64,000 bases of DNA from Kudoa neothunni (lineage: Eukaryota > Animalia > Cnidaria). Shown piece after piece: positions 9,385-58,001 of this stretch. The stretch is taken from assembly GCA_964304625.1 (NCBI GenBank), contig OZ199838.1:13351945-13415944 (forward strand), written 5' to 3'. The notes under the pieces are model-generated. The model had not been told where the DNA came from. It saw nothing but the letters and a program-made list of their open reading frames with translations, and searched no databases. Numbering within the stretch: the stretch's first letter is position 1; every line of letters begins with the position of its first letter. The translations under genes were made by a program, and so were the position numbers.

Positions 9385-12300
9385 TTAGTATTCTTGTAGG
9401 AGGAGTTCTTCAATACGTAACTTGATGTCCGAGTCCAACGAACAAATGTGATCATCAAATTGTGACGGGTAAACACTCTTTATGTAAAATAAATTAGGAA
9501 AAACAAGCAAAAAGTAAGAAACCTTTAATTCATTTGCAGTGAATGCAGCTATCTCCAAAACATTGTCATAGGAACACACCGAGAGTACATCAAGACAAAA
9601 TTTTAAAATAGTAGGTAACAACTCCGTGAGTTCCACGGTGGAGGAGGGTAAACATTTCAAAAAAACATCGACCAAGCGAAGTAAAAATATAATAAAGTTT
9701 TCAGATTTAATGGATCTTGGATATGCGATTAAGGACTTGAACATTGGGAAATAGGCGTCAACCATTTTCTCTGTGTATATTGGGAGGGATTCTTGGACCA
9801 GATACTCGATCCCATCTAAGGAGCTCTCAAAAAAGTATTGTTCATCTCCAAATGGCGGCTCCACATAGTCATTATCTTGATCTTTTCTGGAAAGGAACTC
9901 ATTCTCTGTTCGAGCGATAATATCTATAATATGATTATTAAAGATGTCGCCAATAGATCTAATATCCAGCGAATTCAATGCTTCATCAAAAGTGGAGATG
10001 GTGATACACATTTTGAAACTAGTGATTATAAAGTATAATGTATGGTCTGTGTATTTTTTCATTAGATGAAGAAAAATGCGCTTCAAATTTTTATTCCAGG
10101 TATTTTTAGCCCCTTGCAAATTACCATGGATTACAACAGACCTAAATATTTCACTCACGCCTCCAATTACGACTACGATTCCGCAGGTTTCTTCAAGGGT
10201 TTTAATTATTTCAAGCATGGTGTTCAGGAATAATTCTGCATACGGAGAAAATTCCTTCCCCTGTTTCTTAACTAACAATGACACAAACTTGCATAACAAA
10301 CTAGCCCCATCGTTATTCTGGTTCAAAAATGATTGATCGCATTCAAAAGGCGAAAACTTCCCACTTAAATAATTTCCTGCATTCCTATTATAGCAGGTGG
10401 CGAGTTTGTTAATTTGAGATAGATAAAGGGTAATAGAAGACCCAAGACTTGGCAATATAGGTACAAAATATTCCGATTTGTGTGTCGCTAAGAGGCGAAA
10501 TAAGATCGGGTAAAAGCAAGGCAAGATATCAAGATAATCCTCGGGTAGATTATGTGAATTTTTAAAGTCTTTCACATACATCAAGAGTAATTTGATGGAT
10601 GTATCCCGTCTGATTTCAAAATCTGATTCAAATGTTTCATTGATACAATCTAATCCAAGGTGGAACAAGTGAACCTCGTTTGTTTTATAGGCTCTATCCA
10701 GCACATTAAGAACACTTGCGACAATTTCTGGTAGGTATGGCTCAATTTTATCATTCAACATAACGAACAAATAAGACATTTTACTATGCACAAATTCTAA
10801 CATTGATTTTCCAAAACAAGTGTCATCGTTTTCGGATACAGCTGAAAATAAATCCAAGAAAAGTTGGACCATACTCTTTGAAAATATACCATAATCAGTT
10901 ATAAGCGCCTGTCTATAGAAATATCTAAAAGAGCACAGAGCAGTTTTCTTGACATCGAGCGAGATATGGTTTCCTGCAGACTTAACAATCAATGAAAATA
11001 CATCTCTATGCAAGTCGCTGAATTCTGGGTCATTGTAGTCATCGCACAATATTTCCATCATTTCAATTGCAGCACAAACAGTTTTTGAATCACCATTACA
11101 AAAATAAGGTGTTGCTATTTTGAATATTTCTCTCGGATCGATTGATATTGTTATTTGATTGGTTGCTGCCAACGTACGAAAAGCGATAATCATTCCAGAA
11201 ATATCCTTTCCATCAAATTGTTTAAAGAATTCTATGAGTTTGGTCAGTAACAATGGGTAGACTCTTTTGGTTCCAAGTATATGCGCAATCTGATCAATAT
11301 GAGAGTATGTGGGTGCTGTATCTTGTTTAAAATACACTGCCTTAGATTTCAGATAATCTAAGAACCATTCACCAGAGTCATTTGTGAGAGACTGGATCTG
11401 GATAGACGTCGCGTTGTCAACAATAATGGGGATGTATTCGCAAGGATTGGCTTGGTTGTCATTAAAAAATTTGTGAATAATTAACTCGAGCCAATAATAG
11501 AATTCAAACGAGGCCGGATTCTCGAGATTAATGCTATTAAGAGTCTTAATAGTTTCTCGAATGATTAAGGCTTGATTTTTCTCGAAAATACTTTCGTCTG
11601 TTATGAACAAACCTTGTAACTTGCTCACAAACTCAAATCCATTCGATGTATTCACTAGCACTTTCATCGCATCCATAAAAAGAGGAACCAAATGGGAAAA
11701 TGGTTCGTTGGAAGTGTAAGATTCGTTATTTTTTAACAACAACAACTCCAGTAGATCCATACAAAAGAATGCCATCTAAATATTATTAAGAGTAATTATA
11801 TTCTTTGGGGTTGGATAATTTCACAATATTTTAACTCCACATTTTGAAATATATATCAGAAAACTTTTATTAATTTTCCGTTAAATTTATAAAATGATTT
11901 TTAAAGATAAAATAATACTTTGGGTTTTCCAGAGAAATCTCTAAGCAACGCCATAAAAAATTTTTTGTACTGGGCTAACTGGCGCTTTATGTTTTTGCCA
12001 AACAGAATAGGCATTGCTCTAAATTCTCATTAATGCAAAAACTGCAGGGTTCATTTACTCCAGTGAATTAACAACCATGTCCGCCAAGTTAGGTTGATCG
12101 ATTGCTACACAATTGCTCGCAAATTCGGCAAGCAAAACCCATTTGTTTATTTTATAGTTATTCATCACTTTAATAATCTCAAGACACAACGAGAGCAACT
12201 TTTCTTGATGTGAAGAATTTTTTTCAACAAACAGTAACGAAGTAACAATGGACTTTGAATGACTCATCAATTCATTGTCGGCATTATTGCCGTTAAGAAA

Positions 12301-41567: not shown

Positions 41568-41873
41568 ATCTAACCGATTAATAATGATACGACCACTTTG
41601 TTGGATTTATTAAAACTTTAAAAGTTGAGAATTAAAGATAATCTTGTGTATCTAAAATGGTGTTATTTCCGGATTAATTGTGATAAATTTTTTTTAAATC
41701 AAATTTTTGGAATTAAATTATGAACAGATTTGGATTTATCAAGGTTTGGTTGGGTAAGCAAAAGTTACACGTATGAACCACGACATACAGTATTTCACGA
41801 TCAAGATGCAAACACACTTAAAAATGACGCAAAAAACTATGATAATGCTTTAAATTTACAATAAACGAACAAT

Positions 41874-43008
41874 CTAATTGTTTATTTCTTCACTTCTCAG
41901 ACATGCTGAAAAATATGACTTAGAATGCCGAATATAGCTTTGACAGTTGGCTTCTGAGACAACTCTTTGGCTTAATTCAATACAGTTAAGCAGGTCTTCA
42001 TGAGTTTTTGGGGCCTGCCTTTTCACTTTGCACTTTAACTGATTGAAGACTTCCTCAATGGGGTTGAGAAAGGGGGAATAAGGCGGCAATAGGAGTAATT
42101 TGTTCCCGCTATTATTTATAATGCTCCTAACATTGTCTGTTTTATGGAAGGCCACATTATCCATGATGATCAAGTATTTTTTGTTTTCGGAAGCCAAATC
42201 ATGGAAAAGTTGGATTAGGAAGTCCCCAAAAACCGATTGGTTTACACCACCTCGATGTAGCTTAAAACCACATATTTTAGTGGTGCTCATCGCCGCAATT
42301 AGGGTAATATTTTGCGATCTGATGGTTTTCACTCTTAAGTTGGCTCTTGTTCCACAAAGAGATCTACCTTGGGATCGATGTGTTGCCAAAGAAAACCCAG
42401 ACTCGTCAATGAAAATCATATCGGTGTACGCTGGCTCAAGGTTTATATATTCGTTGACGTAACTAAATTATAATAATTTAGATAAGACAAAGGTTTGTTT
42501 ACTCAAATCTCAAGGAGATTCTTCGGGGGGAGTTTCTATCTGTTGGGACAAGAGAAACCTTCTTAAGAGTGTAATGAAACTCGTTAAGTGCTCTCTGGAT
42601 AGTTTGCCTTGATACTTTTAAATTGTATCGTTGGAAAACTTTATCGGCTAATTGGATGAGGGATAATGTGCAATTTTCATCAATCGCATGAAGAATGAAT
42701 TGTTTATGTTCTTCATTTAATAATGAGCGATGATCACCACCAGTTTCCTTTCGACAATAAGAACCAGTTTTATTATATTTTTTTATTATCCTACTAACTG
42801 TAGCCTCATGCACGCCTAGATCACTTGATATTTGTCGATTAGTCATGCCACTCTATGCCATTATTTCATTAACTATATTTTCGAATATTAATACCTTATG
42901 TCTTATTATAATATCCGCTCTGGTTGATGGAGGAGTTAGTTTATAGGATCTTATGTTTTTTGAACTATTCTCTGGGATATCTGACAAACACGAATCATCG
43001 CTGGACAT
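41874..43008 (-). CDS. Intact 350-aa DD34E transposase; exons 43008-42895, 42852-42503, 42462-41874
   Basis: GT-AG introns of 42 and 40 nt join three ORFs in frame (114+350+589 = 1053 nt). HTH RQISSDLGVHEATVSRII; IFIDESGF, IMDNVAFH, PPYSPFLNPIE, with 34 residues between the second D and the E. Confidence 0.9.
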
Positions 43009-43290
43009 AATGCTAAATTGCGCGTGCGGTTTGCAAAATTCTCGAAAATTCATCTATTAATCAACTGTCATATTACTTTTCAAATGGTTTAGCATGCAAT
43101 CGCAAATAAAAATAATAGTATGAATCTTAAATGAGTCTCATTAAACCCCTTAGAAGATTTTTCTTGTGTAAATTGATAGGAATACTGCCGAACGATTCTT
43201 CTAAGATTCAAAATAATTAAGGCTTAATTTATATAGTAACTATAATTTATTTAAAATAAATATATAAACCTTGAGCCAGCGTACACCGAT

Positions 43291-43836
43291 ATGATTTTCA
43301 TTGACGAGTCTGGGTTTTCTTTGGCAACACATCGATCCCAAGGTAGATCTCTTTGTGGAACAAGAGCCAACTTAAGAGTGAAAACCATCAGATCGCAAAA
43401 TATTACCCTAATTGCGGCGATGAGCACCACTAAAATATGTGGTTTTAAGCTACATCGAGGTGGTGTAAACCAATCGGTTTTTGGGGACTTCCTAATCCAA
43501 CTTTTCCATGATTTGGCTTCCGAAAACAAAAAATACTTGATCATCATGGATAATGTGGCCTTCCATAAAACAGACAATGTTAGGAGCATTATAAATAATA
43601 GCGGGAACAAATTACTCCTATTGCCGCCTTATTCCCCCTTTCTCAACCCCATTGAGGAAGTCTTCAATCAGTTAAAGTGCAAAGTGAAAAGGCAGGCCCC
43701 AAAAACTCATGAAGACCTGCTTAACTGTATTGAATTAAGCCAAAGAGTTGTCTCAGAAGCCAACTGTCAAAGCTATATTCGGCATTCTAAGTCATATTTT
43801 TCAGCATGTCTGAGAAGTGAAGAAATAAACAATTAG
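43291..43836 (+). CDS. Catalytic-domain-only duplicate ORF (181 aa) within the right arm; expression unknown
   Basis: Translation identical to 41874-42419; ATG 4 codons before the first catalytic Asp; no DNA-binding exons upstream. Confidence 0.5.
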   Translation: MIFIDESGFSLATHRSQGRSLCGTRANLRVKTIRSQNITLIAAMSTTKICGFKLHRGGVNQSVFGDFLIQLFHDLASENKKYLIIMDNVAFHKTDNVRSIINNSGNKLLLLPPYSPFLNPIEEVFNQLKCKVKRQAPKTHEDLLNCIELSQRVVSEANCQSYIRHSKSYFSACLRSEEINN

Positions 43837-45723
43837 ATTGTTCGTTTATTGTAAATTTAAAGCATTATCATAGTTTTTTGCGTCATTTTTAAGTGTGTTT
43901 GCATCTCGATTGAACATATTTGCATCTTGATCGTGAAATACTGTGTATGGGTGCGCGAGTATTTAGAATGAAGTTGTTATTTTGCGTTAAATTTAGTTTT
44001 GAAATTTTGTGATTTCATCTGATATGATCGTTTATCTTTATATTGATTTTTATTTTTTTAACGATGATGCAATTAGATACTATCACAGTTGAAGAAAATA
44101 ATACAATATTTTTATAAAAAACGGTTTTAAAAATGTTAATTTATAATTGTGACGTAAAAAACATGATAATTAAACCTAAAAAATGAAATTTGTTCCAATA
44201 TTTTATTTGCTTTTTAATACTTATCATTTATAATTATAGGCATTTTTCGTATTTAAAAACAATTTTAATTACAATATTGAAATTTTAAAATTTTTACAAT
44301 TAAACATGATTTTCTATAATTAATAATGGAAGATATTTACCATGGAATTTTTTAAACCGTTGTTTCCCGCATAATAACAATATAAATTTATACGTCATTT
44401 ATAATAAAAAAAACACGTGTGATAAATTTGTTTGAAAAATATTTAACATAATTATTTAACTTTTTCAAAATTACTCATTTTCATCATATTGACCGACAAA
44501 TCCACTTACAACACAATGTCTTTAGATAACTTTTCTCTTTATTTGTCTATAATTTAATTCGTTGACGAAAATCTTATTCTCAAAGATTTATTTTACTTTG
44601 AAAGTTACATAAAATTAAATATCATAGATTTCAGGAATATAAAATAAAATATTCCTTTGCAGAAGAGCATAACTACATGCCCTTGTGCAATTATAACAAA
44701 ATCTTTCGCCTCCTGTAAAAATTTTCATCTTTTTATATGGGAAGATTCGTTTAAACAGAAAAACTATCCATATAACCGTTAGGTTGCGCAGACATAAAAC
44801 AAAACTTAGTAATGTTTCGAGATTAATGTAGTGTATGATTATTTTCAAACATTTTATACGTGCCAATTATTTGTTTATTACATCATTTTAATATTTCATA
44901 TAAGATTTATTGAATGGGTTAATCCATCCGAACCATTACATACGTTTCTCGCAAATTTTAAAGATAGATATTTTAGTTTATTATTAATAAATAATTCTTG
45001 ATTTTAATTGATTCATTAAACCGAAATAAAGCAAAATTTAATTATTTTGTTATAATTGATTGTCGGTGGTCGGATTCCTCCAAGATTCTATCGGATCATG
45101 TACATTTGATTTATCATCAAGTTGATCACTGATATTAGGCTCGCAGGGATATATGTTATGTATAAAAGGAACAAATTTGTCTTTAGTAATTAAATCCACA
45201 GTTTTTCATATAAAATATTTAAATGCCATCCACATAGTTATCATTATCCATTTGTCGTAGTTACATTATTTACATTAAATATAATAAAAATACTTTCTAC
45301 ATCATTTTAAAAAAAATTTTAAATTTGATCAGCAATTAAAATTCCGCCTTAATGGGGAAATTTATACTATATTTCTATCATTATCTATTTTATGAAATAA
45401 AATAGAGTTGATTTAACCCCAAAACAATCTAATTATGAAAGTGTACAAAATTTTTTATTATTATGTTTTTTTATTTATGTACAATGACCACACATAGTTT
45501 AAAATCAACTAATCTACTCAGTTTTGAAGAACAACACGCAATCCTATAATGAAACCGATATAATAATAAATTTATTCACATGGATAAAATTTATAATTAT
45601 AAAATAATCCCAAATGTTTCCTTAATGACTTACAAGATATAACCTCACCCTATAAAACGATAAAATAATGACACAGCGCAAAGTGCGCAATATCCACCTA
45701 CGCAAAAACCGTTGTTGACTGCA

Positions 45724-56832: not shown

Positions 56833-57146
56833 ATACAGTATTTCACGGTCAAGATGCAAACTGTCTGCGCATGTAGCACTTATGCGCAATCAAGATGCAA
56901 TCATGTTAAATAAAGGTGAAGAAAATTATAACATTGAATTAAATTAAAAAAAATTATTAAATAATACGATTGTTTATTTATTTTTTTCGCGCACAAGTTG
57001 AAATGCAAGATTACGACTTGTGTTGAATATAACGTTGACAATCGATTTCAGACAGCAAAAAGTATTTATTAATTATGGATAATGTGACTTTCCTTAAGAC
57101 TAACGATGTGAGGAGCATCCTGCAGAATAGCGGGCTCGGATTACTA

Positions 57147-57675
57147 CCTCGTTCCCTGGAATATAAGACCCTGTCTTATTTTAATTGTACACAATAAATA
57201 GCTATTAGGTTTTGTTTTCGAAGTATTTCTTAAATTTCTGACAAAATCAAAGGGATTGTGCTCTTATATAACTATCTAAAAAAGTAATGTAAATTGAATT
57301 TTTATAGCGAAAAGTTATCTTAATACAAACGTTATCGATGTCTATGAAATTATTTACAAGCCTAATGTACACCTATGGTATAAGAGAAAAATAATGAGAG
57401 ATTATTGTGAACGTAAACATAAAACAAACTATTAGAATTTTTGATATTATTGCAAAAATATATTTATGTCAAAATAATGTGTTTTATTTTTAAAGAAAAA
57501 TAATAACTTCCAATTTCGAACATAAATAACGTGATTATTCATTATTGTTATAATTAAAGCCGATGAATCAAGGTCCTGTCGAATATTCAATTTCAAGATA
57601 CTCTGAAACAAGGCCAGATCTTATCTAAAATTCCCGCTAAAAATATTGCTAGGCTTCATTTTCGAATAAACATGG
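57147..57675. mobile_element. Tc2/Tigger-like MITE inserted at a TA inside the Tc1 relic
   Basis: Interrupts the LL-LPxYS coding motif; TA flanks; degenerate CC..GTT...AATA TIRs. Confidence 0.65.
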
Positions 57676-58001
57676 TATAACTGCCATCTTATTCACACGT
57701 TTCTCAATCAAATTGAGGAAGTTTACAGCCAATTAAAACTTGAAGTAAAAATATAGGCAGCAAAAACCCAAGAAGATTTGTTGGAAATGTATTGATCTGA
57801 GCCAAAAAGTAATGTCTGAAGCTAATTGTCAACCCTATCTATATTCAGCATTCAAAATCTTACATTTTAGTTTGATTGCGAAAAAAATAAATAAAAAATT
57901 ATATTATTCAATATTTTTTTTAAATTTTATAGTTTTCTTCACCTTTACTTAACATGATTGCATTTTGATTGAACATGTTCGCATCTTGATCGCGAAATGC
58001 T

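What the first reader, a model, noticed from the sequence alone, without database searches (positions are those of the whole stretch)
41788..43943. Palindromic Tc1/IS630-like transposon whose terminal repeats contain the whole catalytic domain
Seen: arms of 664 and 685 bp flank an 807-bp spacer that holds only the DNA-binding exons and upstream region. One arm completes an intact 350-aa transposase. The other is a divergently oriented, ATG-started 181-aa DDE-only ORF. Known: Tc1/mariner TIRs are normally mostly non-coding, Tn5 is regulated by an N-terminally truncated inhibitor, and maize Mu killer silences through a hairpin RNA. Inference: this may be a self-regulating unit that makes a catalytic-only dominant-negative protein from a bidirectional spacer promoter. 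Alternatively or additionally, read-through (for example from NTHL1-B, whose stop is about 685 bp upstream) would give a roughly 660-bp hairpin.
Basis: partly seen in the sequence, partly recalled or inferred. Interest (0 to 1): 0.88.

Follow-up and report, generated by a model that had tools for sequence, protein, structure and literature searches.

The report
Tc1 transposon with mirror-image coding arms
This is a real, mobile jumping gene of the Tc1 family whose two 0.7-kb ends are mirror copies that each hold the whole cutting domain of its enzyme; the two arms are kept identical by copying one onto the other, and nothing yet shows that the extra half-gene does anything.

Summary
Window 41788-43943 is a 2156-bp Tc1-type (DD34E) transposon. 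Its arms of 664 and 685 bp are 100% complementary over 652 bp and flank an 807-bp spacer. The left arm completes a three-exon, 350-codon transposase. The right arm holds a mirror 181-aa ORF with all three catalytic residues.

It is not an assembly artefact or a one-off. The same spacer/arm junction is complete at six places in the 40-Mb genome, with unrelated flanks and mostly TA duplications. The copies fall into lineages about 10% apart.

Within each copy the arms differ at 0-5 positions. Of the arm differences between lineages, 55 of 55 and 53 of 56 sit in both arms alike, including stop codons and frameshifts of dead copies. So the arms evolve in concert at the DNA level, most likely by arm-to-arm gene conversion. 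One old, decayed copy has a 649-bp perfect core between diverged edges, which points to conversion in place.

dN/dS of 0.2-0.36 between lineages shows the architecture coexisted with a selected transposase.

The mirror ORF shows no sign of selection of its own.

Verdict: a new variant of a known kind, of moderate interest.

The parts
41786..41787 (.). TA target-site duplication, left side. The right flank reads TG at 43944-43945, followed by TA.
   Evidence: L002, L003 and L004 have TA on both sides
41788..42451 (-). Left arm (664 bp): terminal 25-mer CAGTATTTCACG... with one TTTGCATCTTGAT-type motif, the 3' UTR and nearly all of exon 3
41877..42462 (-). Exon 3 (586 nt; stop codon at 41874-41876): complete DDE_3 catalytic domain, with D19, D101 and E136 of the exon (DD34E)
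42463..42502 (-). Intron 2, 40 nt, GT..AG, 95-97.5% conserved between lineages
42503..42852 (-). Exon 2 (350 nt): paired-like helix-turn-helix DNA-binding region
42853..42894 (-). Intron 1, 42 nt, GT..AG
42895..43008 (-). Exon 1 (114 nt, ATG at 43006-43008). Weak collinear homologues lie just upstream of exon 2 in the short-TIR relatives.
43014..43035 (.). GCGCG box plus first TTTGCA motif. This is the only recognisable remnant of the ancestral 5' subterminal region; it matches the 5' ends of the short-TIR relatives.
   Evidence: the rest of a 5' TIR is not significant
43130..43258 (+). Degenerate inverted copy of the end of exon 2 plus intron 2 (counterpart 42452-42585), about 65% identical. 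It lies upstream of the transposase gene.
   Evidence: visible at protein level in L004
43259..43943 (+). Right arm (685 bp): mirror copy of exon 3, the 3' UTR and the terminus, with one extra 21-nt terminal motif
43291..43836 (+). Mirror ORF of 181 aa (D, D and E all present), starting at the internal Met15 of exon 3
56836..58001 (+). Older, internally deleted relative (about 70% identical) with arms of about 200 bp that reach into the C-terminal codons. A sibling lies at G000:C1:13173167-13174263.

Best explanation
This is an autonomous Tc1-family (DD34E) cut-and-paste transposon lineage. Its ancestral 5' end was replaced by, or fused to, an inverted copy of at least 0.8 kb of its own 3' part. 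Both termini are therefore 3'-type ends, and the whole catalytic exon is present twice in mirror orientation. The transposase is made from three exons on the - strand. It presumably binds the terminal 25-mer and the 1-3 TTTGCATCTTGAT-type motifs in each arm, and it moves the 2.2-kb unit into TA sites. The arms are kept near-identical by frequent non-reciprocal recombination (gene conversion) between them. That process works on live and dead copies alike and stops where the inner sequences have diverged too far. Because the unexpressed mirror exon is continually exchanged with the selected exon, it stays open without needing a function of its own. Shown: the architecture, its mobility, the concerted evolution and the purifying selection on the transposase. 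Inferred: conversion as the mechanism, the binding sites, and the by-product status of the 181-aa ORF.
For: The same junction is complete at six loci, and exon 1 is found at seven. Full copies have unrelated flanks and TA duplications. The copies form three lineages 9-11% apart, plus an older copy, L031, at 77-82% identity with arms of 783 bp. Within a copy the arms differ at 0 (L001), 5 (L002), a few (L003) or 1 (L004) positions; in L005 there are 0 differences over the 649-bp core. Differences from L001 that sit in both arms alike number 55 of 55 in L004 and 53 of 56 in L005. Stops and frameshifts are shared by both arms in L004 and L005. L005 has decayed ends: 11 substitutions plus a 21-nt indel in the outer 56 bp, CAGT changed to TAGT at one end, and a TG/TA duplication. 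Yet its core is perfect, which is the signature of conversion in place. dN/dS is 0.20-0.36 for exons 2 and 3 between L001 and L004 or L005. Relatives in the same genome have ordinary 26-50 bp TIRs and the same terminal 25-mer. Pfam gives DDE_3 at E 5.6e-28 and the spacing is DD34E.
Against: No reads or RNA could be examined. The junctions therefore rest on the assembly plus their recurrence at six loci, and expression is unknown. Conversion in place rests mainly on one copy (L005), whose terminal decay is lopsided: most changes are at one end. L004 has perfect ends and may have inherited its identical arms. The old copy L031 has arms only about 89% identical, so homogenisation is not unconditional; its spacer carries a 1.5-kb insertion and its right terminus is not recognisable. 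How the inverted duplication arose is unresolved, because a relic of the inner 5' TIR is not statistically detectable.
Confidence: 0.8

Rival explanations
1. Self-regulating unit. The spacer drives a + strand transcript that makes a catalytic-only 181-aa protein which poisons the transposase. Alternatively, read-through across both arms gives a 652-bp perfect RNA hairpin that triggers silencing. On this view the architecture is kept because it restrains the element.
For: The mirror ORF is intact in L001 and L003 and holds D, D and E. Any transcript that spans both arms must be able to form a 652-bp perfect duplex. The architecture persisted through a synonymous divergence of about 0.2. The genome has two Piwi-domain loci.
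Against: The ORF is frameshifted in L002, whose full gene is open. The ORF's identity is fully explained by DNA-level homogenisation, which also spreads stops and frameshifts. Its ATG is an internal residue and is not conserved in the short-TIR relatives. No RNase III domain (Dicer or Drosha type) was found with two Pfam models in a six-frame search, although introns could hide one. No expression data could be obtained.
Confidence: 0.12
2. The arms are made identical at each transposition or gap-repair cycle (template switching or fold-back synthesis that rebuilds one arm from the other), not by conversion in resting copies.
For: The dead copy L004 has perfect termini and near-perfect arms, as if it had moved recently in trans. 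The immobile old copy L031, whose right terminus is not recognisable, has diverged arms.
Against: L005 has decayed termini and a decayed target duplication yet a 649-bp perfect core. The edges of identity differ slightly between lineages, as conversion tracts would. Earlier notes of this scan describe converted arms in non-mobile palindromes of the same genome; I did not test those.
Confidence: 0.07
3. Assembly or amplification fold-back chimera, or a one-off pair of neighbouring insertions at this locus.
For: Perfect inverted repeats are a known artefact class. No reads could be checked.
Against: Six loci on three chromosomes share the same junction, with unique flanks and up to 10-20% sequence divergence between copies. 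No inner termini are present. A preprint describes the likely source assembly as PacBio plus Arima, that is, unamplified long reads (10.64898/2026.02.11.705288).
Confidence: 0.01

Closest known systems
Canonical Tc1 / DD34E elements, including the short-TIR families of this same genome (for example G000:C3:10607955-10609244)
   Same: DDE_3 catalytic domain with DD34E spacing, paired-like HTH N-terminus, CAGT termini, TA target duplication and the same two small introns. The terminal 25-mer is identical or nearly so.
   Different: Canonical elements are 1.2-1.5 kb with 26-50 bp non-coding TIRs. Here the arms are 0.66-0.86 kb and contain the whole catalytic exon, and the ancestral 5' TIR is gone.
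Long-TIR members of IS630/Tc1/mariner. Paramecium Sardine (425 bp) and Thon (about 700 bp) are from PMC3464196. Euplotes Tec, C. elegans Tc3 and the IR/DR elements such as Sleeping Beauty and Minos are from my own knowledge.
   Same: TIRs of several hundred bp with more than one transposase-binding motif per end.
   Different: Those TIRs are described as non-coding or internally palindromic. None that I found is reported to hold the catalytic domain. My literature searches found no such description, which is not proof that none exists.
Bacterial composite transposon Tn5 (inverted IS50L and IS50R, with an N-terminally truncated inhibitor); from my own knowledge
   Same: Transposase coding sequence sits in both inverted arms, only one full functional gene is present, and an N-terminally truncated product is possible.
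   Different: Each IS50 is a complete element with its own inner and outer ends. Here the second arm is a partial copy without an inner end, and no truncated protein has been shown.
Maize Mu killer and other inverted partial duplications of DNA transposons (double Ds, foldback derivatives); from my own knowledge
   Same: An inverted duplication of transposase sequence that can give a hairpin RNA on read-through.
   Different: Mu killer is a single immobile locus that silences the family. Here the inversion is part of the mobile, autonomous element itself and has been propagated under purifying selection.
Arm-to-arm gene conversion in large palindromes (human Y-chromosome palindromes, plastid inverted repeats); from my own knowledge
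   Same: Near-perfect arm identity is kept over long times, changes are shared by both arms, and there are sharp outer and inner limits of identity.
   Different: The scale here is 0.65 kb instead of tens to thousands of kb, and the setting is inside a transposon.

Membership tests
Tc1 family (DD34E) of the IS630/Tc1/mariner superfamily | DDE catalytic domain with 34 residues between the second D and the E | tested here: met
   Pfam DDE_3 positions 1-145 of 146, E 5.6e-28. D19, D101 and E136 of exon 3, D-E spacing 34.
Tc1 family (DD34E) of the IS630/Tc1/mariner superfamily | N-terminal paired-like helix-turn-helix DNA-binding domain | tested here: met
   HTH_23, HTH_32 and HTH_29 score above their cut-offs. 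HTH_Tnp_Tc3_2 (29.2 against a cut-off of 31.5) and HTH_SB are just below theirs.
Tc1 family (DD34E) of the IS630/Tc1/mariner superfamily | TA target-site duplication and TIRs that begin with CAGT | tested here: met
   TA on both sides in L002, L003 and L004. One side is altered in L001 (TG) and in L005 (TG). CAGT termini are present in all except one decayed end of L005.
Tc1 family (DD34E) of the IS630/Tc1/mariner superfamily | Cut-and-paste mobility | not testable with these tools
   Inferred from six insertions with unrelated flanks. No excision assay and no polymorphism data.
Foldback (FB-type) elements | Long arms built of tandem subrepeats, usually without coding capacity | tested here: not met
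   The arms are unique coding sequence. Only the outer 25-100 bp hold 1-3 short motifs.
Composite transposon of two complete elements (Tn5/Tn10 type) | Each arm is an element with its own inner and outer ends | tested here: not met
   No terminal 25-mer (up to 5 mismatches allowed) inside the element. The putative relic of an inner TIR is no better than shuffles. The right arm lacks exon 1 and most of exon 2.
Self-silencing hairpin locus (Mu killer type) | A transcript that spans both arms, and small RNAs derived from it | not testable with these tools

The most novel reading that the evidence does not exclude
The mirror arm is not a passenger. By giving double-stranded RNA on read-through, or a catalytic-only protein from the spacer side, it throttles the family. 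That built-in brake would explain why a low-copy autonomous Tc1 lineage with this odd architecture survived a synonymous divergence of about 0.2 in a 40-Mb parasite genome.
Probability: 0.13. Interest if true: 0.8.

Novelty: new variant of a known kind. Interest (0 to 1): 0.55.

Why it matters
Tc1/mariner elements are the textbook case of short, non-coding terminal repeats. Here an autonomous lineage has carried its whole catalytic exon in both terminal repeats for a long time, with the two copies evolving in concert. It is a compact natural example of palindrome-type gene conversion inside a mobile element. It shows how an unexpressed gene copy can stay open simply by being coupled to a selected copy. 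It also gives a ready-made test bed for an old question: can a DNA transposon regulate itself through a truncated protein or hairpin RNA encoded by its own structure? Practically, such elements break short-read assemblies and confuse TE annotation, which sees two half-genes in opposite directions.

Tried and rejected

2. Host identification by HSP70. Best hits were only 70-78% identical, to many animals, so the result says only that the host is a divergent metazoan. The assignment to Kudoa neothunni comes from earlier notes of this scan. It fits the three-chromosome PacBio + Arima assembly mentioned in a preprint. I did not prove it.

3. Relic of the ancestral 5' TIR in 43036-43129. By eye it looked plausible, but it scores no better than shuffles. 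Only the GCGCG box at 43014-43035 is significant.

4. Relatives in other organisms. The nearest proteins (46-66% identical) sit on contigs of 0.8-1.4 kb that are too short to show the architecture.

5. Literature. Five searches found long-TIR Tc1/mariner elements but none with a coding TIR. One paper on Tec elements was not held.

6. The arms carry more differences than the spacer among the young copies (9 against 3-5). The counts are too small to interpret.

7. Joined protein. The spliced 350-aa protein was never assembled, folded or searched.

8. Complex prediction was not used, because I do not claim that the 181-aa product binds the transposase.
Full report
WHAT IS THERE

Window 41788-43943 is a 2156-bp element. 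The repeat finder gives two arms, 41800-42451 and 43259-43910. They are 652 nt long, 100% complementary and 807 nt apart. Outside the perfect block the two ends share the terminal 25-mer CAGTATTTCACGATCAAGATGCAAA. The right end has one extra 21-nt motif, so the arms measure 664 and 685 bp.

The gene is on the - strand, in three exons:
- Exon 1 is 43008-42895.
- Exon 2 is 42852-42503.
- Exon 3 is 42462-41877.
- They are separated by GT..AG introns of 42 and 40 nt. The total is 114 + 350 + 586 nt, or 350 codons.

I searched the exons one by one by reference.
- Exon 3 matches Pfam DDE_3 from end to end (E 5.6e-28). Its catalytic residues are D19, D101 and E136, which is DD34E spacing.
- Exon 2 carries the paired-like helix-turn-helix (HTH_23, HTH_32, HTH_Tnp_Tc3_2).
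- The right arm holds the mirror image of exon 3. It reads as a 181-aa ORF (43291-43836, +) that starts at the internal Met15.

It continues for about 130 bp at about 65% identity (42452-42585 against 43130-43258). The local alignment score is 45, against 18.8 +/- 2.9 for shuffles. The right-hand stretch is a decayed mirror copy of intron 2 and the end of exon 2. In copy L004 it still reads "LNEFH*TP*KIFLV*IDRN". The original inverted duplication was therefore at least 0.8 kb.

IS IT REAL AND DOES IT MOVE?

The window's genome (G000) has 40.26 Mb in four contigs. A search with the whole element found four more full-length copies:
- C2:5354726-5356984 (L002).
- C2:4920401-4922603 (L003).
- C1:8134992-8137219 (L004).
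- C3:2847359-2849591 (L005).

It also found an older copy at C1:16072572-16076263 (L031).

All have unrelated flanks. TA is present on both sides in L002, L003 and L004, and one side is altered in L001 and L005.

The spacer/right-arm junction is complete at six places. The exon-1 region is found at seven. The seventh copy (L006) is cut 84 bp before the junction and lacks that end. No short-TIR version of this family exists in the genome.

Related families are 64-68% identical in DNA. They are ordinary elements of 1.2-1.5 kb with 26-50 bp TIRs, and they carry the same terminal 25-mer with 0-4 mismatches. The palindromic form is therefore a derived and transposing architecture. It is not a fold-back chimera. 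A preprint states that the chromosome-scale Kudoa neothunni assembly, which has three chromosome pairs, was made from PacBio and Arima data (10.64898/2026.02.11.705288). Earlier agents of this scan assign this genome to that species. My HSP70 check showed only a divergent metazoan.

CONCERTED EVOLUTION OF THE ARMS

The full copies form three lineages: L001/L002/L003 (98-99% alike), L004 and L005. The lineages are 9-11% apart in every segment. Yet within each copy the arms are nearly identical:
- L001 has 0 differences.
- L002 has 5.
- L003 has a few.
- L004 has 1 in 734 bp.
- L005 has 0 in its 649-bp core.

At the 652 arm positions, 55 of the 55 differences between L001 and L004 are present in both arms alike. 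For L005 the count is 53 of 56. Among the young copies it is 6 of 9 and 7 of 9.

L004 and L005 are dead copies, and each shows its stop codons and a frameshift identically in both arms. So identity is kept by a DNA-level process that is blind to coding.

L005 bears most directly on where that process acts. Its outer 56 bp differ between the arms by 11 substitutions and a 21-nt indel. One end has mutated from CAGT to TAGT, and the target duplication reads TG/TA. Inward of that lie 649 bp without a single difference, and then the inner break. A perfect core between diverged edges in an old, probably immobile copy is what arm-to-arm gene conversion in place produces.

There are three caveats:
- The terminal decay of L005 is lopsided.
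- L004 has perfect ends, so it was probably moved recently in trans.
- L031 has arms only about 89% identical. Its spacer carries a 1.5-kb insertion, and its right terminus is no longer recognisable.

The inner limit of identity differs by a few tens of bases between lineages. For example, L004's right arm still reads YVNEY where L001's reads NKY. That is as expected for conversion tracts limited by divergence.

SELECTION

Between L001 and L004 or L005, dN/dS is 0.20-0.32 for exon 3 and 0.34-0.36 for exon 2, at dS of 0.12-0.24. The transposase was therefore under purifying selection while the palindromic lineages diverged. The architecture is compatible with an active element.

Only L001, the window's copy, has all three exons and the mirror ORF open. 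L002 has the full gene open but the mirror ORF frameshifted. L003 is the reverse. That pattern gives no sign that the mirror ORF is selected for itself. Coupling by conversion to the selected exon is enough to explain why it stays open: lineages in which damage spreads to the expressed exon die out.

ORIGIN

Exon 1 has weak, collinear homologues in the short-TIR relatives. A GCGCG box plus the first TTTGCA motif, 6-27 nt upstream of the ATG (43014-43035), matches their 5' subterminal region. Beyond it, 43036-43129 has no significant likeness to a terminal repeat.

The element is therefore either a full copy fused head-to-head to a 5'-truncated inverted copy whose inner end has decayed, or a copy whose 5' end was replaced by an inverted duplication during aberrant repair. 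I cannot tell which.

THE REGULATORY IDEA

The genome has two Piwi-domain loci. Two Pfam models found no RNase III domain in six-frame searches. Another myxozoan does express Dicer (PMC10454682), so this absence needs a proper gene-model check. I put the self-regulation reading at about 0.12.

COMPARISON WITH WHAT IS KNOWN, AND VERDICT

The element meets the sequence-based membership tests for the Tc1 (DD34E) family; cut-and-paste mobility could only be inferred. It fails those for FB-type foldback elements and for Tn5-type composites.

Long TIRs are known in this superfamily, for example Sardine at 425 bp and Thon at about 700 bp (PMC3464196). I found no report of TIRs that hold the catalytic domain or that evolve in concert with the expressed exon.

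This is a new variant of a known kind. It is solid as an observation, with a well-supported DNA-level mechanism and an untested, more exciting functional reading.

Noticed in passing
window 56836-58001; L039 = G000:C1:13173167-13174263: These are two copies of a non-autonomous relative (about 70% identical to the main element, 1.1-1.2 kb). Their arms of about 160-220 bp reach into the last codons of the transposase. The long-arm state is therefore older or more widespread than the main family.
   Followed up: partly
G000:C3:10607955-10609244 (L044), C2:1815909-1817222 (L048) and others: These are short-TIR Tc1 families of 1.2-1.3 kb with the same terminal 25-mer (0-2 mismatches). L044 and L048 align to the whole of exon 3 in one piece. 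Cross-mobilisation between them and the palindromic family is conceivable.
   Followed up: partly
whole genome G000: Six-frame searches found two Piwi-domain loci (C3:4678039-4678911 and C1:899548-900327). Neither PF00636 nor PF14622 found an RNase III domain. Dicer and Drosha may be missing, or they may be hidden by introns.
   Followed up: partly
window 42463-42502 and 42853-42894: The two tiny introns (40 and 42 nt) are 95-97.5% conserved between lineages whose exons are 85-93% alike. The counts are small, but they suggest that most intron positions are constrained.
   Followed up: no
ends of L001-L005 (for example window 41788-41830 and 43890-43943): The number of TTTGCATCTTGAT-type terminal motifs varies from 1 to 3 between copies, and between the two ends of one copy. 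The outermost tens of bases escape the homogenisation that keeps the rest of the arms identical.
   Followed up: partly
L031:3905-5435 (G000:C1:16073904-16075434): A 1.5-kb insertion sits in the spacer of the old palindromic copy, flanked by a 69-bp repeat of element sequence. It holds a 174-aa ORF, which I did not identify.
   Followed up: no
window 43944-43947: The right flank of the window's copy reads TGTA instead of TA. This is either a mutated target duplication or two extra bases at the end.
   Followed up: no
window 9385-11775 (-): This is the longest ORF of the window (796 aa), and it has no Pfam match.
   Followed up: no
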